Virus record (IMG/VR): IMGVR_UViG_3300032323_001214
Coordinates: 185,607 to 249,606 of that record
Direction: 5' to 3' (one strand)
Length of the DNA: 64,000 nucleotides
The notes beneath the pieces are model-generated. The model was not told the DNA's origin and searched no databases. It worked only from the letters and a program-made list of their open reading frames with translations. The position numbers and the translations under genes were made by a program. The number at the start of each line of letters is the position of its first letter. The stretch's first letter is position 1. Of the stretch, positions 6,945 to 49,252 are shown one piece after another.

Positions 6945-7328
6945 ATGAAGATTAGCGAATTACTAGAATCGTACAGAGATACAACATTACCTTTAGGTAA
7001 GTATAGAGGCCCATACGATCCTAGGACAATGCAACATTATTCTGATGAACATATCGATTCATCCGAGTTAACTGATATTGTCGAAGAACTAATAGACGAC
7101 GGCTACGAGCCAGAAGTTGTGAGAATGGATCCAAAAAATCTCACTGCAACACAAGACTGGTTAAGTGATTATGGTAGTGATGAAGCAATGTTCCCTGAGT
7201 ACACAGACAGACCAGTGGTTCTGAGAGATGGTCAGCATTTCTATATACTAGATGGGCATCATAGAGTAGCATCAGCATTAAAAGCTAACAAACCGGTAAC
7301 TGTCTATCTGTTTAACGAATTAGATTGA
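6945..7328 (+). CDS. ParB/Srx-like domain protein with MKISELLE leader
   Basis: L.ATQ and P.V...G..YILDGHHR motifs. Confidence 0.7.
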   Translation: MKISELLESYRDTTLPLGKYRGPYDPRTMQHYSDEHIDSSELTDIVEELIDDGYEPEVVRMDPKNLTATQDWLSDYGSDEAMFPEYTDRPVVLRDGQHFYILDGHHRVASALKANKPVTVYLFNELD

Positions 7329-16688: not shown

Positions 16689-19298
16689 ATGGATTTCAAA
16701 AGTTTATTATCACAACTAGACCAGTTGAACGAAGCAGAAAGTACAGTACATAAAGGTACGTATGGTACAAGTTATGGCAAAGAAGATGTTCGTGACCAGT
16801 ATGGTCATAAAATCGGCAAACAAGATAAAGGCGCTGAAACGAAAAAAGATGCACCTAAGAAAGGTCGCGGCCGCCCTAAGAAAGGTGCTGATGATTCCGG
16901 TGAAGTTAAGAGTTATGACTTCAGTGCATTTGGTATTAACAAAGGCAAAGATGTTAAATTACCAGCACATGACAAAAAGAAAACTACTAAACATAGTTTG
17001 AAAGAATATCTTGACCAATTAGAAAGTGCATTGAACGAAGCTGAACAGATTCAAATCAAACCAGCAAGTCAAATGCCTAAAAAGCCTGGTCAAACATCAC
17101 AGCCTGGTCAACAACAAGGTCAGCAAGCACAGAACACACACGTTATTTCCCAGGGTGATAAGACATTAGGTACAGTTAATAACCCACAATTAGCACAACA
17201 GATTAAACAATCTATTGGCAAAGGTGAAATGACTTTGATGCCTGACCAACAAATGAAAGAAGGCGCTGGATACGATGGTTCAGAGCCATTGGATCTCAGC
17301 AAGAATCCATCTGTTAAGGATGTGTTCAAACGTGCTTTGTATATCTATGATTTCGAAGGCTACGGCAACAACATGGACTACAGCGAAGATGATGCTATTG
17401 ACCAGTATGTTGCTAAAAACTTTGGTCTAGATGTACTGGATCAATTGACTAATGCAAGAACTCAAAGTTACTTTGGTAGAGCCGACGGCAAAGGACCCGG
17501 CGGTGGTGGCAGAACTAGCAACCTAGGCACATCCAGTGCTCCAGGTGGTAACTTCCGCACAACTAAGGCTGGTGTAATGAACAAGCAAGATGCTAAGACC
17601 ATGAAAAGTCGTGTAGCTGACAGATTAGGACGTCACCCTGAACCAAATTTACCAGAAGGAGATATCGGTAAACATAACAATGCCACTACAGGTTTTGATG
17701 CATTAGTTAAAAAACTAACACCTAAATATGGTGTTGAAGCCGCAAAGCGTATTGCTGGTGCTCAGTTAAAGAAAATACGTGAAGCAGATATGCCACCTAA
17801 TGATAGTTTAGCTAGTCCGTTGTCTTTAGAAGAGGGCAAGAAGACTATTAAGAAAGATGACAAAGCTGAAAAAGCTGGTAAAAAAGTTACTAAAGACTTA
17901 GAATACGATATGAATCATAAAGGTAAAGATGATGCTAAAGCTGAAAAAGCTGGCAAAAAAGTTACTAAAGACATTGAGTATGATGAGAAGAAAAAAGTCA
18001 AAGAAGATAAAAAGCCTGACGCAAACAAAAATGGTATTCCTGACTATGCTGAAGACGGCAAAGGCAAAAACGATTTGAAGAAAAAGAAAGTTAAAGAAGG
18101 TATGGATCATAGACTAAAGGCAGCCCGCCATATGGGTAAAGCACATGCTCTTACTAAAGAAGGCTATAATTGCCGTTACGATGACATGGAAGAATCAAGA
18201 CAATATCATGAAGGCTACAAAGAAGGTCTAGATGAGTGCTATGGTCAAATGCCAGTACAAGGTTATGTTGGTGAAGCAAATCCTCCAGCAACAGTTCCTG
18301 GCATGGCAAATCAAGCTATGCGTGAGCCTGCTATGGAAGACGATATGTACGAAATGGATAAGACCGCGTACATGAAGCAACAAGCAATGAAGACTCCAGG
18401 TGACACATTTAAGGCATTTGGTCAAACTTTCAAAGATAAAGAAGTATTAGAAAGTCCATTCGCTTTTGAAGCATTAGAGCAACAACTAAATGCATTACTA
18501 GAAAGTAAAGAAGAAGTTGCTGAAGGCATGACTGTTTCTATCAGTAAAGGTCAACAAGGTTCACCTGATTCAGTAACTGTATCAGCACAAGACAGTGAAG
18601 CCGATCAGTTGTTATCAGTAATCAAGCAAGCCGGTTTAGGCTTGTTTGGTGGCGAAGAAACAAATGGTTATGGTGCCACACAAGGTGATGCCCCACAACA
18701 TGGTGGTTTAGATGTTGTTGGTGACCATGACGGTATGATGGCATTGATTAAGAAAGTTACAGGCGGCGAAGCAGGTAACGGCGACTACGCTGACGAAGAA
18801 GGTCATGACGACCATGATCATAATGAGCCATGTGAAACATGCGGTTCTAGTGATTGCGGATGCGATGATAAAGAAATGGTTGGTGAAGTAGAATCAGAAG
18901 ACCAAATGGAATATGAAGTCGCTGAAGAAATCGATCCTAATAACAGCGACGAAGCGAATGAAGTCAACAGTGACGCTGTTCGTGATGCTGCTCTTGCAAC
19001 TGCTGCCAGCACAAACGAAGAAGAAATTCATGAAGACGAGGCTGAAGCTGAAGCAGAAAATGCTGAAGTTGATTTGAATGAGTGGGCTAATGACGCCGGT
19101 AAAAACGGCACAGACACATCATTTGAACAAGATATTGACTTTATGACTAAAGTTATTTCTGGTGGATTGAACAAGCAGAAGTCTACAGGACAATCTACGA
19201 TCCCAGTAGTATCAACTCAATTAAATCGTTTAGGCAATCCTATGCAAGAATCAGTTGATTTGCTTCACGATTGGAAGAAACTAAGCGGTATTAAGTAA
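16689..19298 (+). CDS. Large acidic modular protein, putative prohead core / internal polyprotein
   Basis: Many [ILVM]xE sites (LNE, LKE, VKE, VAE, LEE); duplicated KDD.KAEKAGKKVTKD.EYD; low-complexity linkers. Confidence 0.55.
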   Translation: MDFKSLLSQLDQLNEAESTVHKGTYGTSYGKEDVRDQYGHKIGKQDKGAETKKDAPKKGRGRPKKGADDSGEVKSYDFSAFGINKGKDVKLPAHDKKKTTKHSLKEYLDQLESALNEAEQIQIKPASQMPKKPGQTSQPGQQQGQQAQNTHVISQGDKTLGTVNNPQLAQQIKQSIGKGEMTLMPDQQMKEGAGYDGSEPLDLSKNPSVKDVFKRALYIYDFEGYGNNMDYSEDDAIDQYVAKNFGLDVLDQLTNARTQSYFGRADGKGPGGGGRTSNLGTSSAPGGNFRTTKAGVMNKQDAKTMKSRVADRLGRHPEPNLPEGDIGKHNNATTGFDALVKKLTPKYGVEAAKRIAGAQLKKIREADMPPNDSLASPLSLEEGKKTIKKDDKAEKAGKKVTKDLEYDMNHKGKDDAKAEKAGKKVTKDIEYDEKKKVKEDKKPDANKNGIPDYAEDGKGKNDLKKKKVKEGMDHRLKAARHMGKAHALTKEGYNCRYDDMEESRQYHEGYKEGLDECYGQMPVQGYVGEANPPATVPGMANQAMREPAMEDDMYEMDKTAYMKQQAMKTPGDTFKAFGQTFKDKEVLESPFAFEALEQQLNALLESKEEVAEGMTVSISKGQQGSPDSVTVSAQDSEADQLLSVIKQAGLGLFGGEETNGYGATQGDAPQHGGLDVVGDHDGMMALIKKVTGGEAGNGDYADEEGHDDHDHNEPCETCGSSDCGCDDKEMVGEVESEDQMEYEVAEEIDPNNSDEANEVNSDAVRDAALATAASTNEEEIHEDEAEAEAENAEVDLNEWANDAGKNGTDTSFEQDIDFMTKVISGGLNKQKSTGQSTIPVVSTQLNRLGNPMQESVDLLHDWKKLSGIK

Positions 19299-35738: not shown

Positions 35739-38006
35739 GTGAACAATTCACCCGAAATCGAAAGCATCATTGAAGAAGCCATTATTCAGGCAAAAGAGCG
35801 CAGACACCAGTATGTAACTATAGAGCATCTGTTACTGTCATTAATTACACATACTCCTTTCAAAAAATGTTTGGATGGTTTTGGTGCAGATACTGAAAAT
35901 TTAATTAAAGAAGTTGGTGCTTACCTAGATAGTCTACATGCAATTGTAGACAAAACATCTGAGGAAGTTCAACCAAGAAAAACTAATTCACTTGAGCGCA
36001 CAATGAATCGTAGCGTTACTCAGGTGTTGTTTACTGGGCGTAGACAAGTTACTACTATAGACCTGTATCTAAGTATTTCAAGCGAAGGTAATAGCCACGC
36101 ACATTACTATTTGCTAAAATATGGAATTAACAAATCTGAATTTGTTCAGCATTGGCAAAGACATTATAAGGGTGCAGAATTCACTGCTAAGTTATCTGAT
36201 AGCCAAGCTGACGAAATCCTCGAAGAATATACAACAAACTTAACACAACTTGCACGACAGGGCAAACTAGAACCGTTGATCGGTCGTAGTGTTGAAATTG
36301 ATGACATTGTTAATGTATTGGCTAAACGATTTAAGAGTAACGTATTGATGGTTGGTGATCCGGGCGTTGGTAAAACTGCTATTGCAGAAGGTATCGCACA
36401 AAAGATTGTCAATGCAGATGTACCTGAATTCTTAAATGACCATGAAGTCTATAGTCTTGAAGTAGGTGCTCTACTTGCAGGATCAAAATATCGCGGCGAC
36501 TTTGAAGAAAAAGTAAAACAAGTCATTGATGCATTGAATACCAAGAAGAAAGCTATCCTATTCATTGATGAAGCTCACACTATGCAGGGTGCAGGCTCTA
36601 GTAATACTGGTGGACCTGACTTTGCAAATATGATTAAGCCTGCAATTACTAAAGGTACATTGAAAGTTATCGCAAGTACAACTTGGGAAGAATTCTATGA
36701 GTCTTTTGAAAAGGATCGTGCATTGATGCGTAGATTCTATAAAATCTCTATTGATGAACCATCAAATGAAACTACTCAAAGAATCCTTAAAGGCTTGAGC
36801 ACACGTTTAAATGACTTCCATGACGTTAACATCACTGACGAAGCTATTGCATCTGCTGTAGAAAACGCTGCCCGTTACATTCACGATAGAAAGAATCCTG
36901 ATAAGAGTATTGATTTACTTGATGCAGCTTGTGCAAAGCAACGTGTTGCTGGTAATAAAGGAATAGACATTACTAAAGATTTGATCCATGAACAAGTAGA
37001 AAGATACACTGGTGTACCTGCTGACAAACTCAATGGTGATAATTTTTCTCGCATTAATGACCTTGAGTTGAACATCAAGGGGAAATTATATGGTCAAGAT
37101 GAAACAATTGAACAAGTTCTTGAAAGAGTATATGTAAGTTTTGCTGGGATTGGCAATGATAATAAGCCAACTGCTAGCTTTATCTTCTTGGGCCCAACAG
37201 GTACAGGTAAAACAGAATTGGCTAAGTTGTTGAGTAAGAACCTTGACATGCCATTGCTCAAGTACGACATGTCAGAATACGGTGAAAAGCATTCGGTGTC
37301 TAGCTTGATCGGTCCACCCCCTGGTTATGTTGGCTTCGGAGACAGTCAAGTTGGCGGTGGTAGATTGATTAGCGATTTGAGCAAGAATCCTCACAGTATC
37401 TTGTTGTTTGACGAAGTTGAAAAAGCACACCCTGATATCTTTAACATCTTCTTGCAAATGCTTGATGAAGGTCGCATTACAGGATCTAACGGAAAAGAAG
37501 TTAACTGTAAAAATACTATCATTATTATGACTAGTAATTTAGGTTCCAGTGATAGCGAAAGAAACAATATTGGTTTTGGTAATCAAGAAAAAACAGGTGA
37601 AGATGATAAAGCAATTAAAGAATTCTTCAAACCTGAATTCAGAAACCGTGTTGATTTAATTTGTAAATTCAAGAAACTTGATTTGTTGGCTATTAAAAAG
37701 ATTGTAGTCAAGTTCACTGAGGAACTTAAGAAAACACTGATGGACAAACATAATATTAGTTTGAACCTTACTGAGCCGGTAATAGAATACCTAGCTGAGA
37801 ATGGTTATGATAATAAAATGGGAGCACGTCCACTTGCTCGTAAAATTGATGAAATGATTCGAGTTCCTATCTCAAAGAAGATTCTTTTCGAACGCATAAA
37901 AAATGCAACTATCAATGTTACATTAGTAGACGATAAAATCGAGTTTAATTCGGTGCAAAAGCAAACAGCGAGAGTAGGCGAAGATGGGATTATTGAAATC
38001 AGTTGA
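35739..38006 (+). CDS. clpA: ClpA-like Clp ATPase (two AAA+ domains)
   Basis: GDPGVGKT, FIDEAH, GPTGTGKTE, DMSEY, PPGYVG, FDEVEKAH, IGF ClpP-docking loop, MGARP. Confidence 0.9.
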   Translation: MNNSPEIESIIEEAIIQAKERRHQYVTIEHLLLSLITHTPFKKCLDGFGADTENLIKEVGAYLDSLHAIVDKTSEEVQPRKTNSLERTMNRSVTQVLFTGRRQVTTIDLYLSISSEGNSHAHYYLLKYGINKSEFVQHWQRHYKGAEFTAKLSDSQADEILEEYTTNLTQLARQGKLEPLIGRSVEIDDIVNVLAKRFKSNVLMVGDPGVGKTAIAEGIAQKIVNADVPEFLNDHEVYSLEVGALLAGSKYRGDFEEKVKQVIDALNTKKKAILFIDEAHTMQGAGSSNTGGPDFANMIKPAITKGTLKVIASTTWEEFYESFEKDRALMRRFYKISIDEPSNETTQRILKGLSTRLNDFHDVNITDEAIASAVENAARYIHDRKNPDKSIDLLDAACAKQRVAGNKGIDITKDLIHEQVERYTGVPADKLNGDNFSRINDLELNIKGKLYGQDETIEQVLERVYVSFAGIGNDNKPTASFIFLGPTGTGKTELAKLLSKNLDMPLLKYDMSEYGEKHSVSSLIGPPPGYVGFGDSQVGGGRLISDLSKNPHSILLFDEVEKAHPDIFNIFLQMLDEGRITGSNGKEVNCKNTIIIMTSNLGSSDSERNNIGFGNQEKTGEDDKAIKEFFKPEFRNRVDLICKFKKLDLLAIKKIVVKFTEELKKTLMDKHNISLNLTEPVIEYLAENGYDNKMGARPLARKIDEMIRVPISKKILFERIKNATINVTLVDDKIEFNSVQKQTARVGEDGIIEIS

Positions 38007-40424: not shown

Positions 40425-41549
40425 ATGAAAAAGATTGTCATTATGCCGGGAGGCTTTCATCCTTTTCATGCAGGACATATGGCATTATACAATTCTGCTA
40501 AAAAAGCATTTCCTGATGCGGATGTGTATGTTGCTGCCTCTGATTATCAAAAAGATCGTCCATTCCCCTTTGCACTAAAAGAAAAATTAGCAAGGATCGC
40601 TGGGGTAGACGCTGGTCATTTTGTGCAAGTTAAAAGTCCATTTGAAGCAAGTGAAATAACTAGTAAATATGACCCTGATAATACTGTATTGATTTTTGTA
40701 AAAAGTCAAAAGAATGCTAAGAATGGTCCTGATCCTGAAGGTCCGTTTCCCGCAGAAGTTGATCCTACTACGGGTAAATTACCGCTAGTTACTAGAGGTC
40801 CTAGGAAAGGACAACCGGTAAGTAATAGATTGCAGTATTACAAAGGTAATGAAGATAACTTGCAGCCTATGAGTAAACACTCATATTTGGCTTATCTGCC
40901 TACAGTTGAGTTTGGACCTGGAATTACCAGTGCTAGTCAGATTCGTAAAGCATGGCCTACATTAAATGACAAACGCAAGACAGCAATGGTCATGAGTTTA
41001 TATCCAGCTGCTCAAAAGAATCAAAAACTTGCCGCTAACATCGTTGCTATGCTAGATCAGGTAATGGGTGTACAGCAAGATGTGGACGAGGCTAAGAAAA
41101 AGAGAAAGAAAAAATCTTCAAGATCAATGGGGGGCTATTTCTTCCCCGGCTATGCCTATTACGGTGGTAGCGGTGAATACGGAGATGGCGGAGGCGGTGG
41201 AGAAAGTGTGGAAGAAGGCTCTCAGTCAAAGGATGAGCTAATATGGACATTGAACAATTTTGACTATTACACTGACAACGGTAGTATTTATGTAAATGAT
41301 AACGGTGATAAGATTGCTCGTATCGGTTCTAATTGGAAACATCAAAGTGGTAAGATGGGTAGTGGAGCAGAAGAATTGAGTGCTTTTTTGAGTTCACTGC
41401 AAGAGGTGAACGAAGGCTTTGGAATCAACTATCCAGGCACATACGAACAAGAAAACAATATGTTCAAAGGTCAAGGCCAAAGACGTGTCGGAGACTTGAC
41501 TAATGAAACTAGTTTGTCCGAAAGCTTGGATTATCTAGAAGAAAAATAA
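40425..41549 (+). CDS. HIGH-family nucleotidyltransferase domain fused to small modules
   Basis: PGGFHPFHAGH and SASQIR; C-terminal modules bounded by VDE, VEE, VNE. Confidence 0.7.
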   Translation: MKKIVIMPGGFHPFHAGHMALYNSAKKAFPDADVYVAASDYQKDRPFPFALKEKLARIAGVDAGHFVQVKSPFEASEITSKYDPDNTVLIFVKSQKNAKNGPDPEGPFPAEVDPTTGKLPLVTRGPRKGQPVSNRLQYYKGNEDNLQPMSKHSYLAYLPTVEFGPGITSASQIRKAWPTLNDKRKTAMVMSLYPAAQKNQKLAANIVAMLDQVMGVQQDVDEAKKKRKKKSSRSMGGYFFPGYAYYGGSGEYGDGGGGGESVEEGSQSKDELIWTLNNFDYYTDNGSIYVNDNGDKIARIGSNWKHQSGKMGSGAEELSAFLSSLQEVNEGFGINYPGTYEQENNMFKGQGQRRVGDLTNETSLSESLDYLEEK

Positions 41550-42523: not shown

Positions 42524-42528
42524 AAACA

Positions 42529-42550
42529 AGGCCCCGAAAGGGGCTTTTTT
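42529..42550 (+). terminator. Intrinsic terminator
   Basis: GCCCC-GAAA-GGGGC followed by TTTTTT. Confidence 0.9.
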
Positions 42551-42586
42551 AATGGCTATACTAAATACACTAAAGGGAGATCAACT

Positions 42587-42679: not shown

Positions 42680-42696
42680 GTATTGATAAATACTTA

Positions 42697-44427
42697 ATGA
42701 ACCTAAAAGAGCTAAATTCCTTCAAAATATCCGACGCCGTCACTTTCCATGACAAACTCAACCACAAGTTGTGGAATGGTACTAAGTTACGCCCAGAAGT
42801 CAAACAACAACTAGAAGCAATTGCAGATGATTTTCTGCAAGAGATGGGAATCCATGAGTTAGATGTGAGAGATATTACTATTTCAGGAAGTAATGCTGCA
42901 TATAGTTATACCGATCATAGTGATTTGGATTTGCATATATTAGTGAATGTAAATGATTTGCCTAGTAGTGATGTATATAAAGAATTGTTTCAAGCAAAAA
43001 AGACAATATATAATGATACACACAACATAACCATACGCAAAGTTCCGGTTGAATTATATGTACAAGACGCAAGTGAACCAGTTGTAAGTTTGGGGGAGTA
43101 CAGCATAAAAAATGATAGCTGGATTAAGATTCCTACAAAGCGTAGAAGCAACTTTGATCAAAATGCCACCAAAGCAAAATATAATAAGTTATTAGATATT
43201 GTTGAACGAGCAATAGAATCAAACAATTTAAACAAAATTCAAAAAGTATTAAAGAAGATTAAACAATATCGTCAAGCTGGTTTAGATAAAGGTGGCGAAT
43301 TTGGTCCTGAGAATCTAGCATATAAAGCACTACGTAGTCAGGGCTATATTACTAAACTGTACGATTTGCGTGATAAACTACACAGCAATCGTTTAAGCAT
43401 TGAAGGTATGTATTCTAATATGGATGAAGATTATGATCCCAATGGTCCTCCTCCTGGCCCTGAGTTCAAGCCTACAATGCCAGCTGGTACTGTCAAAGTA
43501 GATGTAAGTGATGTATATGACTGGTACAAGTTAGGTCAACATATTAGTAATATGAAAGGTCTAGGCAAACACGATTTTGGTAGTGGACCCCCTAGTACTA
43601 TATTGTCATTTGGTGACGAAGATACTGAACACAAATATATTGACGCATTACAGAAAACGGGCTTAACAACTACTGATATTGATCCAGTCGATCCTAAACA
43701 ACCTAAAGGTATGAAGCGCCAGAAAGTTGACCCTACATACAATGTTAACGAAACATTTAATAAACCTTATTCAATAACATGGGAAAAAAGTGAGTACGGC
43801 GATTACGATGCTCTGGCCACACTAGAAGATGGCACACACCTAAGCATAATGTTTGAGCACACTACTCCCTACGAAGTTGCTGTTTCTTTTTGGAGAAACA
43901 ACAGTCAAGAAGTCACAGGCGAAGGTGATGCACAACGAGTATTTGCTACAGTATTGTCTGCTATTCAACAGTTTTTAAAACAAGAGCAGCCGGCAAATAT
44001 AACTTTCTCAGCAGTGAAAGCAGATGATCCATCGGGCAGCAGATCCAAGCTTTACGACAAACTAGTTCAGCGTTATGCTAGCGCATGGGGATATCAGTCT
44101 CGCAGTTTTGACCATGATGACAAAGTAGAATTTGAATTATCTAAAATAAACAAGAATGTAAAAGAAGATGAAACAATGCAATATGCGGCTGAAAAAACAC
44201 CGCCAACAAATACATACGGTGGTTTAAGAGATAACCAATATCGAGGCAGTATCTCAGAAGCCTCAGGATACATTCCTAGCGAAAAAGAGAAAAATGACCC
44301 GCGTTTTAAGACGGCATTAACAGTAGATGTTAAGCCAGATAGTATAAAAAAGAACGCAAAAGCTTTTAGCTGGCTCACAGATAGAGCGGGCATTCCACCA
44401 ACATTAAAAGCTAGCGGCAAATTCTGA
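42697..44427 (+). CDS. Pol-beta-superfamily nucleotidyltransferase fused to several small modules
   Basis: ISGSNA.Y.Y...SDLDLH (GS..DxD) and VELYVQD; downstream modules bounded by MDE, VNE, VKE, ISE. Confidence 0.75.
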   Translation: MNLKELNSFKISDAVTFHDKLNHKLWNGTKLRPEVKQQLEAIADDFLQEMGIHELDVRDITISGSNAAYSYTDHSDLDLHILVNVNDLPSSDVYKELFQAKKTIYNDTHNITIRKVPVELYVQDASEPVVSLGEYSIKNDSWIKIPTKRRSNFDQNATKAKYNKLLDIVERAIESNNLNKIQKVLKKIKQYRQAGLDKGGEFGPENLAYKALRSQGYITKLYDLRDKLHSNRLSIEGMYSNMDEDYDPNGPPPGPEFKPTMPAGTVKVDVSDVYDWYKLGQHISNMKGLGKHDFGSGPPSTILSFGDEDTEHKYIDALQKTGLTTTDIDPVDPKQPKGMKRQKVDPTYNVNETFNKPYSITWEKSEYGDYDALATLEDGTHLSIMFEHTTPYEVAVSFWRNNSQEVTGEGDAQRVFATVLSAIQQFLKQEQPANITFSAVKADDPSGSRSKLYDKLVQRYASAWGYQSRSFDHDDKVEFELSKINKNVKEDETMQYAAEKTPPTNTYGGLRDNQYRGSISEASGYIPSEKEKNDPRFKTALTVDVKPDSIKKNAKAFSWLTDRAGIPPTLKASGKF

Positions 44428-44470
44428 TTGAGTAGTATTTTGATAAATACTATATCAAACGGAATTCATT

Positions 44471-45754
44471 ATGAAAATCACACAAATCATCAGCGAAACT
44501 ACTGCGGGCTGTGTTGCTACAGTAGCAATGCCAATGGGCGAAACACAAAAGCGTCCTAAAGTTTCAGGACTAGAGCCAGCGGACAAAGTAATGTTCGGTA
44601 AGTCAAAGAAAAAAGGACCCTATGGAAACAGCCTTAGCGAGGGCAAAATGAAAGACTTGTCTATGGATTTACGAGCAAGCAAAGATGGTTTATCTGATAT
44701 CGACTTTAAAAAGAAGTATGGAAAGACCAAAGAAGAAATGCGTAAATTAATGCAAGATGCACGTAAAGAACAAAAAGTTAATGAAGATGAACTAAGCGAA
44801 CAGGATCTAATACTAGTTCCCGGTCAAGGTCGTAAAATGAAAACTGGTTTCGTGCCACATGGTAAAAGTCGTCTTGACCATGAAGTTGAGATGGCTCGTA
44901 GTGATTTATTCAGTGCCGCACAAAATGCTCAAAAAGTCTATTCGATGATTAAACACACAAGTGAGGAAGAGGGTCTTGAAGGCTGGGTACAAGAAAAGAT
45001 TATCAAAGCCAATGATTACTTAAACACTATCCGTGAATACTTAGAAGGTAAGCAAGTGCAAGGTATGGCGGAAGACATGACACGCAGAGGATTCTTGCGC
45101 GGTCTCGGAGCCGCAGCAGCAGGGGCAGCTGGTATTGGTGCTGCCGGTAATGCTCAAGGTAAAGTGACCTTTGATAAAGACGGTAATCCAATAAAACCAC
45201 CAGACTGGAAGAACTTTCAGGGTTCAGCACCGGCTCAGGGTGCAAAGCCACTACCTGCAGATAATACTGCATCATCAACTGGTTCTGCTTCAGCCTCTTC
45301 TCAGACAGCTAGCGCAGGAAGCTCTCCTAGTTCTGCATCAAGAGCAGCCGCTAATCAAGCCAGTGCCGCGGCAGAAAAGATTAGATATACCAATCCTAAA
45401 TTTAATCAAGAATACGAGCGAATTGAAAAATTCTATCAACAAACTAAATCAAGCATATTGAATAACAAAAGATACAGTCCTAACCCTGATATTGCTAAAC
45501 GACAACACGCTGAATTTGTGAAAATGTTGATAGCAGCAGATACTGAATTTGCTCAAAAGACCAATGAGTTGATGAAAGAATACAGCCGCCTAAAAGAACA
45601 CGGCGTGGCGGAAGGTGCCAAAGTAGATAGAATGATTAAGCACATTACTAAATCTGAAAAGAAATTAGGCAAGAGTAAAGATGAAGCTGAGAACATAGCC
45701 TGGGCGACTGCTAATAAACGTGGCATGTTAGACAACAAGAACAAGAAAGCGTGA
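44471..45754 (+). CDS. Modular putative head polyprotein (MKITQIISE leader)
   Basis: Late box 44442-44449; modules separated by LSE, VNE, GMAE, GVAE. Confidence 0.7.
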   Translation: MKITQIISETTAGCVATVAMPMGETQKRPKVSGLEPADKVMFGKSKKKGPYGNSLSEGKMKDLSMDLRASKDGLSDIDFKKKYGKTKEEMRKLMQDARKEQKVNEDELSEQDLILVPGQGRKMKTGFVPHGKSRLDHEVEMARSDLFSAAQNAQKVYSMIKHTSEEEGLEGWVQEKIIKANDYLNTIREYLEGKQVQGMAEDMTRRGFLRGLGAAAAGAAGIGAAGNAQGKVTFDKDGNPIKPPDWKNFQGSAPAQGAKPLPADNTASSTGSASASSQTASAGSSPSSASRAAANQASAAAEKIRYTNPKFNQEYERIEKFYQQTKSSILNNKRYSPNPDIAKRQHAEFVKMLIAADTEFAQKTNELMKEYSRLKEHGVAEGAKVDRMIKHITKSEKKLGKSKDEAENIAWATANKRGMLDNKNKKA

Positions 45755-47443
45755 TATGAGCAATATTCTAAAAGGTTTAAATGAAAGGTATTTTAGTCGT
45801 GATGATCAAGACCAACAGAATGCCATGGATACACGCCGTAGAAGCGATTTGAGTGGCGAACGAAATGCTGGTCTTAATGAACCAGATGAATTACCTACTA
45901 TACCTCAACAAAGTCGCAATGGCGTTTATGAATACGATGTACCTACTGGTCAAGAAAAAATAGCACAAGAATTAGGATTACAACTGCATAAAGGTCATTG
46001 GTTCTCTCGTGTCCCGGTTCAAAAAGCAAATTTTCAATTTGGTCGTCCTCAATTTCATGAGATTCCAGCAAAAAATGTATATGAAGCAGAACAGGATTAC
46101 GGTCCTGAGTATCAAGATAAAGTAAAGCGTCTAGGTCAGATGGCTAAACAAGGTGAGCGTAAAACTGTTTGGGATCCTGTCAAGCGTGTGTACAAGACTG
46201 TTCCAGTAAATCCAGCTAAACAGCAAGGTGTGGCGGAAGAACAATTAGATGAAAAGTGCTGGGACACTCACAAGCAAGTTGGAATGAAAAACAAGGGCGG
46301 CAGAATGGTGCCTAACTGTGTTCCAAAAGAAAGCGTTGGGGAAGAGCAAGATATTACTGAAGAAAAATGTCCACACTGCGGTGGACCAATGTTCAGTGAA
46401 ATGATTATGAACGAGAAGAAAGATGCTTGCTACTACAAAGTTAAGAGCCGTTATAAAGTATGGCCAAGTGCTTATGCCAGTGGTGCATTAGTTAAGTGTC
46501 GTAAGAGTGGAGCAGACAGTTGGGGCGATGGTGGCAAGAAGAATGAAAGTTCTATACTAGAAGGTATTGAACAAGTAGATGAGAACTTACACAAGTGGTT
46601 CAAAGAGAAGTGGGTTCGTTTTGGTCCCGATGGTAAGATTCGTGGTGACTGTGCTAGAGGTGATGATAGTGAAGGTAAGCCAAAGTGTTTGCCACAAAGT
46701 AAAGCACACAGTCTAGGTAAGAAGGGTCGTGCAAGTGCTGCCTCACGTAAGCGCAGAGAAGATCCTAATCCAGAACGCCACGGTAAAGCAATCAATGTTA
46801 ACACTAAGAAAAAGTCAAATGAAGGTGTGGCGGAAGGCTCTACTTTTCCTGGCTCACTGAGTGGTCGTGAATGGTCAAAAGTTGGTAGACAAATAAAGTC
46901 ATCTCAGGGTCGTGATAGCAGTGTTACAAGTCCACATCAACGAAAAGATTGGTACAATCCAAAAGATCCAAGAAGTAGCAAACAGCAAAAATTGGACTAT
47001 TTAAAATCTATGAAGGCAAAGCAAGGTGTGGCGGAAGACCAACTTGATGAGATTAGTTCTACCACTGCAAAAAATGTATACAACAAGAGAGAACAAGAAC
47101 ACAAAGACCTAATGAACAAGACTTATGGCAATGCTCAAGATCCACAAGTTCGACAAGCTCAACAAAAACTTGCAAAAGCCGCAAAGTCCTATTTCAATCG
47201 TGGTGCCAAAAAAGGCGTAGAGGAAAGTTATGATTTGGACGCCTTCTCCGGGGTCAAGTTTCTTAATCCAGAGACAGGTAAAATGGGATCATTCTACTAT
47301 TGGTCTTCAATGGAAGGTAAGAACGAGGCGTACTCTATGATTACTAATAAAAAATTGGTGCCGGCCCACAATGACGGGACACCAATGACTTGGGATGAAT
47401 ACAAACAGGCTCTAGATGGTGGTAATCAAAGTGTGGCGGAAGA
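45059..47443 (+). repeat. Dispersed in-frame junction repeat, consensus CAAGGTGTGGCGGAAG
   Basis: [GA]TGGCGGAAG at 45065, 45605, 46230, 46827, 47028, 47433; degenerate copies near 41076, 41202, 41400, 46329, 47211. Confidence 0.85.
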
Positions 47444-47576
47444 ACAACTAGACGAAAAGTGGTCAACGAAATATAAAGACAGTATCAACTGTAGTAATCC
47501 TAAAGGATTTAGCCAAAAAGCACATTGTGCTGGTAAACAGAAAAATGAAAGTGCTGTTATGAAAGGTCTTAAATAA
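45756..47576 (+). CDS. Modular putative head polyprotein (MSNILKGLNE leader)
   Basis: About ten short modules (CW...PNCV, CPHCGG, KKDACY...WPSAYASG, LHKWFKEKW, KWS.KYK.SINC) separated by VAE/LDE/VDE. Confidence 0.7.
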   Translation: MSNILKGLNERYFSRDDQDQQNAMDTRRRSDLSGERNAGLNEPDELPTIPQQSRNGVYEYDVPTGQEKIAQELGLQLHKGHWFSRVPVQKANFQFGRPQFHEIPAKNVYEAEQDYGPEYQDKVKRLGQMAKQGERKTVWDPVKRVYKTVPVNPAKQQGVAEEQLDEKCWDTHKQVGMKNKGGRMVPNCVPKESVGEEQDITEEKCPHCGGPMFSEMIMNEKKDACYYKVKSRYKVWPSAYASGALVKCRKSGADSWGDGGKKNESSILEGIEQVDENLHKWFKEKWVRFGPDGKIRGDCARGDDSEGKPKCLPQSKAHSLGKKGRASAASRKRREDPNPERHGKAINVNTKKKSNEGVAEGSTFPGSLSGREWSKVGRQIKSSQGRDSSVTSPHQRKDWYNPKDPRSSKQQKLDYLKSMKAKQGVAEDQLDEISSTTAKNVYNKREQEHKDLMNKTYGNAQDPQVRQAQQKLAKAAKSYFNRGAKKGVEESYDLDAFSGVKFLNPETGKMGSFYYWSSMEGKNEAYSMITNKKLVPAHNDGTPMTWDEYKQALDGGNQSVAEEQLDEKWSTKYKDSINCSNPKGFSQKAHCAGKQKNESAVMKGLK

Positions 47577-47619
47577 TGAGAGACTATGATTTTTATTGGA
47601 ACTTAAAAGGATACCCCAG

Positions 47620-48066
47620 ATGATATTAGCAGACGCATTGAAAACATTACTAGCTACTAGTTATGCATTCGTAATTAAAACTCAAAACTTTCATTGGAAT
47701 GTTGAAGGGCCAGACTTCCCTCAGTACCATGAATTCTTAGGTAATTTATACGAAGAAGTATATGGTAATGCTATTGACCAAACAGCAGAATTGATTCGTC
47801 AATTAGATAGTTATACACCCGGATCTATTAGTAGATTTGCAGAGTTAAGCCAGATACCAGATCAGATTAAAATTCCACGTGCTGAACTAATGATGGCAGA
47901 ATTGTATGATGATAATCAAAAGATTTTACAAATGTGGAAAGAATCATTTCATATAGCAGAACAAGCTGATGAACAAGGTATAGCTGATTTTATAGCAAGC
48001 CGCATTGACGCACATGGCAAACATGGATGGATGTTGCGTAGTATTTTGAAGAAAGCTCGGGCATAA
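47620..48066 (+). CDS. dps: Dps / ferritin-like DNA protection protein
   Basis: NFHWNVEGPDF..YHEF...LYEE....D..AE.IR; H.KH.WML. Confidence 0.9.
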   Translation: MILADALKTLLATSYAFVIKTQNFHWNVEGPDFPQYHEFLGNLYEEVYGNAIDQTAELIRQLDSYTPGSISRFAELSQIPDQIKIPRAELMMAELYDDNQKILQMWKESFHIAEQADEQGIADFIASRIDAHGKHGWMLRSILKKARA

Positions 48067-48206: not shown

Positions 48207-48641
48207 ATGAAAAAAATTATAACAACAATTATGTTAGCACTCGCAACTACTGCATATGCACAAAAGGCTCCTCAGGGTGTAACATATGACGCAAATATAT
48301 TGAGAGTTAGTGATGGTGACACAATTGTAATCGCAGCTCCATTCTTACCACAACCTTTGAAACCAGAACTAGCTATTCGTATATACGGGGTTGATACTCC
48401 TGAAAAAGGATTTAGAGCAAAATGTCCTGCTGAAGATGCTAAAGGACAAGCTGCAAGTAAATTCACAAAAGATGCAGTAGCAGCCGCACAAAAACGCCAA
48501 GTAATACTATATGCATGGGATAAGTTTGGTGGGCGAGTATTAGGTGATATATTATTAAATGGACAAAGCCTTCGCACTATGTTGATTCAAAATGGATTTG
48601 CACGTGAATATTTTGGTGATGCAAAACAAAGTTGGTGCTAA
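48207..48641 (+). CDS. Thermonuclease (SNase-like) with signal peptide
   Basis: V.DGDT, IRIYGVDTPE, DKFGGRVLG, L..G.AR; N-terminal signal ending AYA. Confidence 0.9.
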   Translation: MKKIITTIMLALATTAYAQKAPQGVTYDANILRVSDGDTIVIAAPFLPQPLKPELAIRIYGVDTPEKGFRAKCPAEDAKGQAASKFTKDAVAAAQKRQVILYAWDKFGGRVLGDILLNGQSLRTMLIQNGFAREYFGDAKQSWC

Positions 48642-48676
48642 AAGATAAATATAGTATAAAAGCAACTTTTAATTAA

Positions 48677-49252
48677 ATGAGATTTAACGAAATACTATCA
48701 GAATCAGCAGTAAAACAACTAGCAAAAAAATTGCCTAGTTTAGAAAAACACGACTATAATACCATTGATAAACTAATGAAAACAGTAGCTAAACAACATA
48801 GTATCACTGGTAAAGCACTGCATGACCTTTTTGTTAAAAAATATAATAAAACTCCCGACGACTGGATTAAAAATAAATTAGATGAGAGCAACGTTGATAC
48901 AGAATTACAACAGGAAGTTGATAAATTCTGTAAATGGGCATGTAACAAACTATCTATTAAAGACGAACCCCATATTGAGTTGAGTATGGATACTGAAGAA
49001 GCGCAAACTAATCATCATACCGGCGGACACATAATGGGTGATGATAAGATTTGGGTGTATGCTAAAAATCGTAATTTAGTAGATATATTACGCACAGTAT
49101 TTCACGAATTGGTTCATGTTCGTCAGGGCGAACTAGATATGATTAATCCGGGTGATAGTTATCCGGGCAGTCCAATTGAGGTGATGGCTGACGCCTTGGC
49201 TGGTAAATATATCAAAATTTATGGTGAAAAGAACCATCATATCTTTCAATAA
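48677..49252 (+). CDS. Zincin-like metallopeptidase domain protein (MRFNEILSE leader)
   Basis: RTVFHELVHVRQ (HExxH) plus downstream E..A; late box 48644-48651. Confidence 0.7.
   Translation: MRFNEILSESAVKQLAKKLPSLEKHDYNTIDKLMKTVAKQHSITGKALHDLFVKKYNKTPDDWIKNKLDESNVDTELQQEVDKFCKWACNKLSIKDEPHIELSMDTEEAQTNHHTGGHIMGDDKIWVYAKNRNLVDILRTVFHELVHVRQGELDMINPGDSYPGSPIEVMADALAGKYIKIYGEKNHHIFQ

What the first reader, a model, noticed from the sequence alone, without database searches (positions are those of the whole stretch)
44471..47576. Cassette-like polyproteins whose modules are joined by a conserved DNA repeat encoding a protease site
Seen: two adjacent late genes are strings of unrelated short modules (about 20-175 aa). 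Six junctions carry the 9-mer TGGCGGAAG (GTGGCGGAAG at 45605, 46230, 46827, 47028, 47433; ATGGCGGAAG at 45065), consensus CAAGGTGTGGCGGAAG. It is always in frame as [QEH]-[GS]-[VM]-A-E, with within-gene spacings of 540, 597, 201 and 405 nt; three copies continue into a shared xQLDE. The VAE codons I checked elsewhere in this AT-rich window are GTT/GTC/GTA-GCT/GCA-GAA (e.g. near 18516, 18918, 59731), so the GTG-GCG choice points to nucleotide-level constraint. Established: T4 prohead protease gp21 cleaves after Glu in [IL]xE motifs of packaged proteins. Inference: one element serves both as a microhomology or recombination site for inserting and swapping modules and as the cleavage site that frees each module in the capsid. 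This would be a modular, integron-like system for varying injected effector cargo.
Basis: partly seen in the sequence, partly recalled or inferred. Interest (0 to 1): 0.9.

Follow-up and report, generated by a model that had tools for sequence, protein, structure and literature searches.

The report
Shuffled phage polyproteins with conserved joints
Two late genes of an uncultured freshwater jumbo phage encode strings of small unrelated protein modules joined by one 15-base sequence that encodes a likely head-protease cut site, and comparison with relatives shows that modules are gained, lost and swapped exactly at that sequence.

Summary
TGGCGGAAG occurs six times in the window (0.16 expected), always in frame as [QEH][GS][VM]AE. 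A codon-resampling null gives 0.11 copies for the two genes.

The window lies in a 250-kb IMG/VR jumbo-phage record from lake water. The phage has a T4-type head (Gp23 capsid protein, gp21/S77 prohead protease) and a PA5oct-like terminase.

More than 7,900 metagenomic protein clusters share these modules. Twenty proteins with gene 2's N-terminal module have twenty different architectures.

In relatives the joint is the 15-mer AAGGTGTGGCGGAAG. GTG is used 83-88% of the time (background 19%) and GCG 82-85% (background 7%). The flanking residues vary only as NAA and GNN codons.

Homology between relatives stops at the last base of the repeat. Contigs from sister samples show deletions and reorderings whose crossover lies inside it.

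A virion-protein orthologue family has 0-5 modules inserted at the same joint.

Cleavage is inferred, not shown. The joint has a hydrophobic P3 and Glu P1, lies in low-confidence linkers, and sits in late-promoter-like genes; gene 1 has a T4 CTS-like leader.

No integrase was found, so "integron-like" is only an analogy. The closest known case is the T4 internal-protein CTS. I rate it a new variant of a known kind.

The parts
44471..45754 (+). Polyprotein gene 1 (427 aa). It has three modules: a conserved N-terminal module with a CTS-like leader MKITQIISE, a TAT-signal-like plus low-complexity module, and a small basic C-terminal module.
   Evidence: ORF; joints at aa 197-201 and 377-381; orthologues in syntenic loci with different middle modules; leader
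45756..47576 (+). Polyprotein gene 2 (606 aa), start codon 1 nt after the stop of gene 1. It has about 8 modules, including a CW...PNCV mini-module, a Zn-ribbon/DUF5872 module, a WFKEKW module and a C-terminal WSxKYK...CxNPKGFSQ module.
   Evidence: AF2 pTM 0.29 with folded islands separated by pLDDT<50 linkers
45059..45074 (+). Joint 1, CAAGGTATGGCGGAAG = QGMAE|D
45599..45614 (+). Joint 2, CACGGCGTGGCGGAAG = HGVAE|G. Homology with L003 begins here, at GAAGGT.
46224..46239 (+). Joint 3, CAAGGTGTGGCGGAAG = QGVAE|E. Identity with L003 ends at base 46239. Loose contig ends stack here in samples X2 and X3.
46821..46836 (+). Joint 4, GAAGGTGTGGCGGAAG = EGVAE|G. The source-sample assembly graph breaks here. 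It is one side of the 606-nt deletion joint seen in X3.
47022..47037 (+). Joint 5, CAAGGTGTGGCGGAAG = QGVAE|D. Loose contig ends stack at 47037 (X4).
47427..47442 (+). Joint 6, CAAAGTGTGGCGGAAG = QSVAE|E. It is the other side of the X3 and X2 deletion joints.
46074..46085 (+). Decayed joint NVYE. Relatives have QGVAE at the homologous place (P0010, P0011).
46332..46343 (+). Decayed joint SVGE. Relatives have GVAE or ESIEE before the Zn-ribbon module.
45075..45170 (+). Twin-arginine (TAT) signal-like start of module 2 of gene 1 (DMTRRGFLRGLGAAAAGAAG...), directly after joint 1.
   Evidence: Pfam TAT_signal 18.6 bits, below the cut-off. The same arrangement occurs in L160 and in P0047, there with a TonB_C domain.
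44442..44449 (+). GATAAATA, a T4-late-promoter-like motif 22 nt upstream of gene 1
   Evidence: 14 in the window against 5.2 expected. Genome-wide most copies lie 15-35 nt upstream of starts, including virion genes.
42697..44427 (+). Neighbouring gene: N-terminal nucleotidyltransferase plus a variable C-terminal part. It has the same promoter-like motif at 42685-42692.
48677..49252 (+). 191-aa protein. It has a CTS-like leader MRFNEILSES, an N-terminal module that also occurs inside polyproteins (P0025), and a C-terminal HExxH domain resembling M78/IrrE peptidases. It is the alternative candidate protease.
   Evidence: GATAAATA at 48644

Best explanation
The two genes are a hypervariable cargo locus of a freshwater jumbo phage with a T4-type head. 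Each gene encodes a string of small, independently folding modules. The modules are joined by a linker with consensus K-K-x-[QE]-G-[VM]-A-E followed by G, E, D or A.

Shown:
- The linker is encoded by an almost invariant 15-mer, AAGGTGTGGCGGAAG. Its conservation lies at the DNA level: synonymous sites are fixed, and the flanking residues vary only within NAA and GNN codons.
- Module gain, loss, replacement and reordering between relatives break exactly at this 15-mer.
- Joints with the consensus sequence have more varied neighbouring modules than decayed joints.

Inferred:
- The short identity serves as the crossover point for homologous or short-homology recombination between linker copies. 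This could happen within a genome (deletion, duplication) or between co-infecting relatives (replacement). It would use the phage's general recombination system (UvsX) and no dedicated integrase. New joints are therefore born with the consensus and later decay to [VIM]-x-E.
- The peptide is a maturation site (hydrophobic P3, Glu P1) cut by the phage's gp21-type prohead protease inside the prohead, freeing the modules.
- Gene 1 enters the prohead through an N-terminal leader like the T4 capsid-targeting sequence.
- The freed modules are delivered with the DNA. Some then act in the host; modules that begin with a TAT signal would be exported to the periplasm.
For: Repeat and codon bias.

DNA-level conservation in relatives:
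- 59 distinct junctions in L003-L038: GTG 52/59, GCG 50/59, GGT 49/55.
- 114 non-ascertaining junctions: GTG 85/102, GCG 93/114.
- The -1 codon ends in AA in 98/113 (Q/E/K) and the +1 codon starts with G in 104/113.
- Four-fold sites in the adjacent homologous module are near saturation.
- A second conserved peptide in the same ORFs, ES[SA][IV][LM][KE]G[LI], shows no codon conservation.
- The exact 15-mer was found in at least 120 IMG/VR stretches, in frame in 118.

Shuffling and breakpoints:
- Orthologue sequences and 20 of 20 distinct architectures.
- HSP ends lie at joints in 37/129 cases against 6.4% expected, p=6.5e-15.
- Base-exact breakpoints against L003.
- Contig joints 46824>47431 with 12 shared letters, 46839>47431 and 46837>46224. 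Loose ends at 46239 and 47037. Module 47037-47430 is absent from the sister samples.
- Insertion of 0-5 modules at KEKEQGVAE| in orthologues of a virion protein.
- Consensus joints have more diverse partners than decayed ones.

Cleavage and packaging:
- S77 protease at 97.7 bits, next to the portal, scaffold and Gp23.
- Degenerate joints keep [VIM]-x-E.
- All 4 joints and both decayed ones lie in pLDDT<50 segments.
- T4-lineage and phiKZ-lineage prohead proteases cut after Glu (PMC10052503).
- T4 ipII and ipIII share 47 identical nt that end at the IAE|A site.
- CTS-like leader on gene 1 and three other proteins.
- Late-promoter-like motif shared with virion genes.
- The PA5oct homologue of the 786-aa protein is a virion protein by ESI-MS/MS.
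- TAT-signal modules directly after joints.
Against: - No direct evidence of cleavage, of presence in virions or of injection.
- VAE sites in this phage's scaffold and acidic core proteins are not conserved in two relatives. The conserved candidate sites in the capsid-protein propeptide are L-L-E|G and I-L-E|N, not V-A-E.
- Gene 2 has no CTS-like leader.
- Two large related records with polyproteins showed no Gp23, S77 or portal, though they are probably fragments.
- Recombination at the 15-mer is inferred from its outcomes. Breakpoints at joints could partly reflect selection that only tolerates in-frame, between-module events.
- GTG and GCG are rare codons and AGGTG is Shine-Dalgarno-like, so a translational role for the nucleotides is not excluded.
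- An M78-like peptidase gene lies 1.1 kb downstream.
- No function could be assigned to the modules of the two window genes.
Confidence: 0.6

Rival explanations
1. Protein-only reading. The linker is a protease site or spacer. The identical nucleotides are kept for translation (a rare GTG-GCG pair or the SD-like AGGTG pausing the ribosome between modules), or are left over from recent duplication. They are not a recombination substrate.
For: GTG (11.6%) and GCG (7.3%) are rare codons here. AGGTG is complementary to the anti-SD (own knowledge). Modules fold independently.
Against: GGT, GAA and CAA in the same unit are the common codons yet are equally fixed. The flanking residues Q/E/K and G/A/D/E share only NAA and GNN. 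Breakpoints are base-exact at the repeat. Consensus joints have more varied partners than decayed ones. Module-internal four-fold sites are saturated, so recent descent cannot explain the identity.
Confidence: 0.12
2. The linker is not cut. The products are beads-on-a-string multidomain proteins, and the conserved peptide is a spacer or a repeated binding or targeting tag. Recombination at the joints still shuffles the modules.
For: No cleavage data exist. Decayed joints that lack the motif are tolerated. Polyvalent proteins such as the N4 virion RNA polymerase are packaged uncut (PMC5512222).
Against: Degenerate joints keep exactly the hydrophobic-x-Glu pattern needed by gp21-type enzymes. 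TAT-signal modules sit internally, right after joints, which makes sense only if a new N-terminus is made. In the virion-protein family the simplest form is a single QGVAE| before a conserved 55-aa C-terminal peptide, which looks like a propeptide site.
Confidence: 0.15
3. The linkers are cut, but by another enzyme and outside the capsid. Candidates are the neighbouring M78/IrrE-like zinc peptidase or a host protease. The modules would then be ordinary late or early cytoplasmic proteins made economically from one ORF.
For: An HExxH M78-like gene is syntenic with the locus in several relatives. The same domain occurs as a module of other viral multidomain proteins. Embedded metallopeptidases are the proposed processors of polyvalent proteins. 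The [QE]|G dipeptide in the motif would also suit a 3C-like Gln/Glu-specific enzyme (own knowledge).
Against: The M78 gene is missing from many syntenic loci that have polyproteins. Known M78 enzymes do not cut after Glu (own knowledge). No 3C-like protease was seen. The 191-aa protein itself carries a CTS-like leader, which suggests it is cargo.
Confidence: 0.12
4. GTG or ATG in the joint is an internal start codon, so nested C-terminal products are made.
For: The position holds only V or M in the window, and mostly GTG or ATG in relatives. It has an A-rich upstream context.
Against: 15% of joints use GTA, GTT or GTC. The idea does not explain the fixed GGT, GCG and GAA-G. Nested products would not separate the modules.
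Confidence: 0.03
5. Assembly artefact: the repeats cause chimeric metagenome contigs that mimic shuffling.
For: The source-sample assembly graph breaks at 46836.
Against: The shared stretch is 12-16 nt, shorter than assembler k-mers. The same architecture logic is seen in thousands of proteins from independent projects and sources. ORFs stay open across all joints.
Confidence: 0.01

Closest known systems
T4 internal proteins IPI/II/III and their capsid-targeting sequence (CTS), cut by prohead protease gp21
   Same: Both are diverse, unrelated packaged proteins preceded by a short conserved element that ends in a hydrophobic-x-Glu protease site. In T4 itself, ipII and ipIII share 47 identical nt (RBS plus MKTYQEFIAE) that stop right at the site. 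Internal proteins are a diverse defence set sharing only the CTS (PMC3012670). The genome here has a gp21-family protease, and gene 1 has a similar leader.
   Different: In T4 each cargo is its own gene with one N-terminal site. Here many cargos are fused in frame in one ORF with the site repeated between them. The conserved DNA unit is only 15 nt, with no promoter or RBS.
Polyvalent proteins of phages and conjugative elements (Iyer et al. 2017, PMC5512222)
   Same: Both are many unrelated domains in one phage polypeptide, predicted to be packaged, processed and delivered with the DNA, with extensive mosaicism. Homologues here carry GNAT, ParB_N, sigma-70 r4 and cytidylyltransferase domains.
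   Different: That work proposes embedded metallopeptidase domains for processing. It describes neither a regular conserved inter-domain site nor a conserved DNA joint. The modules here are mostly tiny (35-140 aa) and of unknown function.
phiKZ/SPN3US head ejection proteins processed by the prohead protease
   Same: Jumbo-phage heads hold many internal proteins. The gp21-related protease cuts after Glu (A-x-E), sometimes at several sites in one protein (PMC10052503).
   Different: Those cuts remove propeptides from single proteins. No module arrays or nucleotide-conserved sites are reported.
Motif-mediated modular shuffling in T4-type phages (PeSL cassettes, PMC2839356; gp38 adhesin glycine-rich motifs, PMC3157838)
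   Same: Short conserved sequences flank variable units and are the crossover points for insertion, deletion and replacement between close relatives.
   Different: PeSLs are intergenic promoter plus stem-loop units around whole genes. Here the joint is in-frame coding sequence that probably has a second role as a protease site.
Junction motifs of polymorphic toxins (Rhs PxxxxDPxGL, CdiA VENN); own knowledge, not tested here
   Same: One conserved peptide marks the border of a variable domain. In Rhs it is also a self-cleavage site. Its coding DNA gives the homology by which orphan modules are swapped in.
   Different: Those systems have one variable tip per protein, paired with immunity genes, in bacterial genomes. 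They do not have serial arrays of many modules.
Integrons
   Same: Both are an open-ended array of exchangeable units bounded by a repeated site.
   Different: No integrase, no attC hairpins, and no separate ORFs; the units are pieces of one reading frame.

Membership tests
T4-type packaged internal proteins (gp21 substrates) | The phage encodes a gp21/S77 prohead protease in a T4-type head module | tested here: met
   PF03420 at 97.7 bits at G000:56966-57601, beside the portal, scaffold-like protein and Gp23
T4-type packaged internal proteins (gp21 substrates) | A site with hydrophobic P3 and Glu P1 | tested here: met
   G-[VM]-A-E in all six joints; 297 sites in homologues; degenerate joints keep [VIM]-x-E. 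This tests the sequence pattern only.
T4-type packaged internal proteins (gp21 substrates) | An N-terminal capsid-targeting leader ending in a protease site | tested here: inconclusive
   Gene 1 starts MKITQIISE, against T4 MKTYQEFIAE. Four G000 proteins share the leader, and 0 of 1489 internal Met positions match it. The pattern was defined post hoc, and gene 2 lacks it.
T4-type packaged internal proteins (gp21 substrates) | Protein found in virions and cut during maturation | not testable with these tools
   Uncultured phage. The only indirect link is through the PA5oct ESI-MS/MS structural protein homologue that carries the same joints.
Polyvalent proteins (Iyer et al. 2017) | Several unrelated domains in one phage-encoded polypeptide with mosaic architectures | tested here: met
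Polyvalent proteins (Iyer et al. 2017) | Domains drawn from the conflict repertoire (peptidase, ART, ParB, nucleases and others) | tested here: inconclusive
   None is recognised in the two window genes. Homologues have GNAT, ParB_N, sigma-70 r4, TonB_C and cytidylyltransferase domains.
Polyvalent proteins (Iyer et al. 2017) | An embedded peptidase domain for self-processing | tested here: not met
   No peptidase domain in either gene. An M78-like domain is present only in a separate gene 1.1 kb downstream.
Integron | An adjacent tyrosine-recombinase integrase | tested here: not met
   PF00589 is absent from the 249.6-kb record, while the controls ring in 14 of 14 genomes. The record is 67% complete.
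Integron | attC-type imperfect palindromes bounding promoterless ORF cassettes | tested here: not met
   The joint is a non-palindromic 15-mer read in frame inside one ORF.
Motif-mediated modular shuffling (T4 PeSL type) | Indel and replacement breakpoints between close relatives lie in the repeated motif | tested here: met
Motif-mediated modular shuffling (T4 PeSL type) | The motif is an intergenic early promoter plus a terminator stem-loop | tested here: not met
   The motif is coding and in frame, with no stem-loop.

The most novel reading that the evidence does not exclude
A 15-nt sequence acts at two levels at once. As DNA it is the crossover point that lets any module be inserted, deleted or exchanged in frame. 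As peptide it is the prohead-protease site that frees each module. Together these give jumbo phages an open-ended, self-renewing 'protein cassette array' for their packaged cargo. The system is spread over thousands of freshwater phage genomes and over several genes per genome, including extensions of true virion proteins.
Probability: 0.45. Interest if true: 0.9.

Novelty: new variant of a known kind. Interest (0 to 1): 0.8.

Why it matters
It would show how large phages diversify the proteins they carry into the cell without risking frame or fold. One short element guarantees both a legal recombination point and later release of each piece.

It opens a very large, almost wholly unannotated pool of small modules. 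There are at least 160 families in 120 proteins, and more than 7,900 related protein clusters. These may include anti-defence and host-takeover factors.

It also suggests a practical design rule: portable cleavable joints and leaders for loading foreign proteins into phage heads.

Finally, it makes an old idea directly testable, namely that conserved targeting and cleavage sequences of T4 internal proteins double as recombination linkers.

Tried and rejected
- Close relatives in GenBank phages: none at DNA level. Gene 1 has no tblastn match. Gene 2 matches only through two or three modules shared with cyanomyovirus proteins, which lack GVAE joints.
- Function of modules: Pfam and PHROGs give only DUF5872 and a sub-threshold TAT signal. 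Foldseek of the AF2 model against PDB found nothing at E<=0.001.
- Independent support for VAE as a protease site from head proteins: VAE in the scaffold and acidic core proteins is not conserved in G002 or G007, so the apparent enrichment was dropped.
- Co-occurrence of joints with the S77 protease across large contigs: 3 records have both Gp23 and S77. Others lack the portal, capsid protein and protease together, so they are fragments. The test is inconclusive.
- Codon-rarity test in high-GC loci: those loci mostly carry single copies that may be chance hits, so it is uninformative.
- Literature: no paper holds QGVAE or GVAEG in a phage context. Nothing was found on polyproteins of jumbo phages of this kind.
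- Integron reading rejected: no integrase.
- Assembly-chimera reading rejected: the repeat is shorter than assembler k-mers, and the pattern recurs across independent projects.


Full report
**What is there.**
The 9-mer TGGCGGAAG occurs six times in the window, all on the + strand and all inside two adjacent ORFs. Chance expectation is 0.16. The ORFs are 44471-45754 (427 aa) and 45756-47576 (606 aa).

Every copy is in frame as [QEH][GS][VM]AE, and the spacings are multiples of three. In this genome GTG is 11.6% of Val codons and GCG 7.3% of Ala codons, so five VAE all spelled GTG-GCG-GAA has probability 1.5e-11. Resampling synonymous codons gives 0.11 copies in the two genes against 6 observed.

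**Whose genome.**
- The window is the last 64 kb of a 249,606-bp IMG/VR virus record with 37% G+C, estimated 67% complete.
- It comes from lake or freshwater metagenomes.
- The terminase is about 50% identical to that of Pseudomonas jumbo phage PA5oct.
- The head module is T4-type. It holds a portal, a gp21/S77 prohead protease (PF03420, 97.7 bits), a coiled-coil scaffold-like protein and a Gp23 capsid protein.
- A UvsX recombinase is present. No tyrosine recombinase was found.
- The window also holds tail sheath, tail tube and adaptor genes.
- The motif GATAAATA resembles the T4 late promoter TATAAATA (own knowledge). It occurs 14 times in the window against 5.2 expected.
- Genome-wide it lies mostly 15-35 nt upstream of gene starts, including virion genes. 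It precedes gene 1, the nucleotidyltransferase gene before it, and the 191-aa gene after the locus. Calling these 'late genes' is therefore reasonable, though it rests on a motif only.

**The locus in relatives.**
- Gene 2 has more than 7,900 metagenomic homologues. They match in pieces at 80-95% identity over 15-45% of its length.
- Their sequences show the same first and last modules with quite different modules between. Almost every junction reads [KEQ]QGVAE[GAE].
- Splitting 120 homologues at the motif gives 490 segments in 160 families. The 20 proteins that share gene 2's N-terminal module have 20 different architectures, with modules in different orders.
- In 36 IMG/VR loci the genes lie in a conserved neighbourhood: ClpB ... 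glycosyltransferase-like 307-aa gene, nucleotidyltransferase, gene 1, gene 2, Dps, nuclease, 191-aa protein, PP-loop ATPase, PolB. The gene 2 ORF ranges from about 370 to about 1,200 aa.

**DNA-level conservation.**

| Junction set | GTG | GCG | GGT |
|---|---|---|---|
| 59 distinct junctions in the 36 IMG/VR loci | 52/59 | 50/59 | 49/55 |
| 114 junctions in loci found by the exact 15-mer, ascertaining copy removed | 85/102 | 93/114 | 105/114 |
| Background in the same ORFs | 19% | 7% | 43-45% |

- The codon before the motif ends in AA in 98/113 junctions and encodes Q, E or K. The codon after it starts with G in 104/113 and encodes G, A, D, E or V.
- Information content falls to background on both sides. 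The conserved unit is thus the 15-mer AAGGTGTGGCGGAAG rather than a peptide.
- Four-fold sites inside the adjoining homologous module are close to saturation.
- A second conserved peptide of the same ORFs, ES[SA][IV][LM][KE]G[LI], shows ordinary codon variation.

**Breakpoints.**
- Against L003 (PolB 86% nt identity), one block of 88% identity runs from inside joint 2 to the last base of joint 3, at 46239. The sequences are unrelated from the next base on.
- Over all loci, 37 of 129 HSP ends lie at joints against 6.4% expected (p=6.5e-15).
- Contigs were examined from the source sample and three sister samples. One joins 46824 to 47431 with 12 shared letters, which is a deletion of two modules with the crossover inside the repeat.
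- Another joins 46839 to 47431, and a third goes back from 46837 to 46224. Loose ends stack at 46239 and 47037.
- Module 47037-47430 is absent from the sister samples, while 46249-46839 is abundant in them.
- Several other listed joints have short sides and were not relied on.

**A virion protein with the same joints.**
- Outside the window, the 786-aa ORF after the terminase carries QGMTE, QGMAE, QGVAE and QGMAE in its C-terminal third.
- Its N-terminal part is homologous to a PA5oct protein annotated as structural by ESI-MS/MS.
- Its orthologues share the core and then the sequence KEKEQGVAE. After that come 0 to 5 unrelated modules, followed by a conserved C-terminal peptide (EFAGDYATGEAGQW...RLLGK).
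- One of the inserted modules also occurs in a gene 2 orthologue, P0014.
- This pattern is cassette insertion at the joint. It ties the joints to a virion component.

**Is the joint a protease site?**
This is inferred. The points in favour:
- Degenerate joints in front of the same modules (ESIEE, DVNEE, DIAEE, GVTEE, SMAEE and others) keep an aliphatic residue at P3 and Glu at P1. This is the known requirement of gp21-type enzymes. T4 ipII and ipIII are cut after IAE. The SPN3US protease cuts after A-x-E.
- In the AF2 model (pTM 0.29) all four joints and both decayed ones fall in pLDDT<50 stretches between folded islands.
- TAT-signal-like sequences begin a few residues after a joint in gene 1, in a related record and in P0047, where a TonB_C domain follows. 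That arrangement suits a newly made N-terminus.
- Gene 1 and three other proteins of the genome start with a leader of the form MK-x-x-Q/E-I-I-x-E, resembling the T4 CTS.

The points against:
- VAE sites in the scaffold proteins are not conserved in relatives, and the capsid protein keeps L-L-E|G instead.
- An M78/IrrE-like peptidase gene lies nearby.

**How it most likely works.**
Identity of 12-16 nt between joints gives the phage's recombination system a place to cross over that is always in frame and always between folded units. An event within one genome deletes or duplicates modules. An event between co-infecting relatives, together with a second crossover in another joint or in the conserved flanks, replaces them.

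Joints made this way carry the consensus and later decay. In line with this, consensus joints have more varied upstream partners than decayed joints; the probability of sharing the same partner family is 0.02-0.09 against 0.09-0.54.

After late expression, the polyproteins enter the prohead and are cut at the joints. The modules leave with the DNA.

**Comparison with known systems.**
- The nearest known case is the T4 internal-protein system. The T4 record itself shows ipII and ipIII sharing 47 identical nt (RBS plus CTS) that end at the cleavage site.
- Polyvalent proteins share the multi-domain packaged-cargo idea, but not the regular site or the DNA joint.
- PeSL cassettes share motif-mediated shuffling, but they are intergenic.
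- No paper in the library mentions this motif in phages.

I file the finding as a new variant of known kinds, not as an integron.

Noticed in passing
window 45759-45779, 46551-46565, 47550-47570: A second recurrent peptide, ES[SA][IV][LM][KE]G[LI], is seen as SNILKGL, SILEG and SAVMKGL. It sits at the very N-terminus, inside, and at the very C-terminus of polyproteins here and in relatives. Gene starts and stops appear to fall inside it. Its codons are not conserved.
   Followed up: partly
window 42685-42692, 44442-44449, 48644-48651 and 11 more; genome-wide 36 copies: GATAAATA lies mostly 15-35 nt upstream of gene starts on the coding strand, including before the head-tail adaptor and virion structural genes. 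It is probably this lineage's late promoter, one base off the T4 TATAAATA.
   Followed up: partly
window 44471-44500, 48677-48706, 6945-6974; G000:131403: Four proteins begin with a leader of the form M[KR]-x-x-[QE]-[IL]-[ILT]-x-E-[ST], like the T4 capsid-targeting sequence MKTYQEFIAE. They may mark further packaged proteins.
   Followed up: partly
window 45075-45170: A twin-arginine export signal lies in the middle of a phage polyprotein, right after a joint. Related polyproteins carry TAT signal plus a TonB C-terminal domain, which hints at cargo aimed at the host periplasm.
   Followed up: partly
window 40425-41549 and 42697-44427: The cytidylyltransferase-like and nucleotidyltransferase genes upstream have conserved enzyme N-termini and variable C-terminal parts with joint-like remnants (ESVEEG, LSIEG). 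Homology with L003 stops at LSIEG. They look like further, older module carriers.
   Followed up: partly
window 48677-49252: This 191-aa protein combines a module also found inside polyproteins (P0025) with an HExxH domain resembling M78/IrrE peptidases. ESM Atlas neighbours show the same domain fused to cytidylyltransferase, NTP_transf_2, NT5C and superoxide dismutase domains in other viral proteins.
   Followed up: partly
window 35739-38006, 47596-48066, 48207-48641: The phage encodes a full ClpB/ClpA-type double AAA+ chaperone, a Dps/ferritin-like protein and a signal-peptide-bearing staphylococcal-nuclease homologue beside the cargo locus. All are syntenic in relatives.
   Followed up: no
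G000:82835-102097 (outside the window): A single ORF of 6,420 aa.
   Followed up: no
G000:56343-56969 (outside the window): A homing-endonuclease-like gene (phrog_314) is inserted between the prohead protease and scaffold genes. Another lies at G000:158892-159554.
   Followed up: no
window 42527-42552: A GC-rich hairpin followed by a T-run (GGCCCCGAAAGGGGCTTTTTT), like an intrinsic terminator. It lies just before the promoter-like motif of the nucleotidyltransferase gene.
   Followed up: no
L164:1171-2454 and L165:2201-3016 (cyanomyoviruses RN05-S, P-SSM2): The WFKEKW, DUF5872 and CW...PNCV modules also occur in one cyanomyovirus protein. It lies in the structural gene cluster, between gp15 and gp16, and some records annotate it as a structural protein. 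It has no GVAE joints. The modules are therefore older and wider than the joint system.
   Followed up: partly
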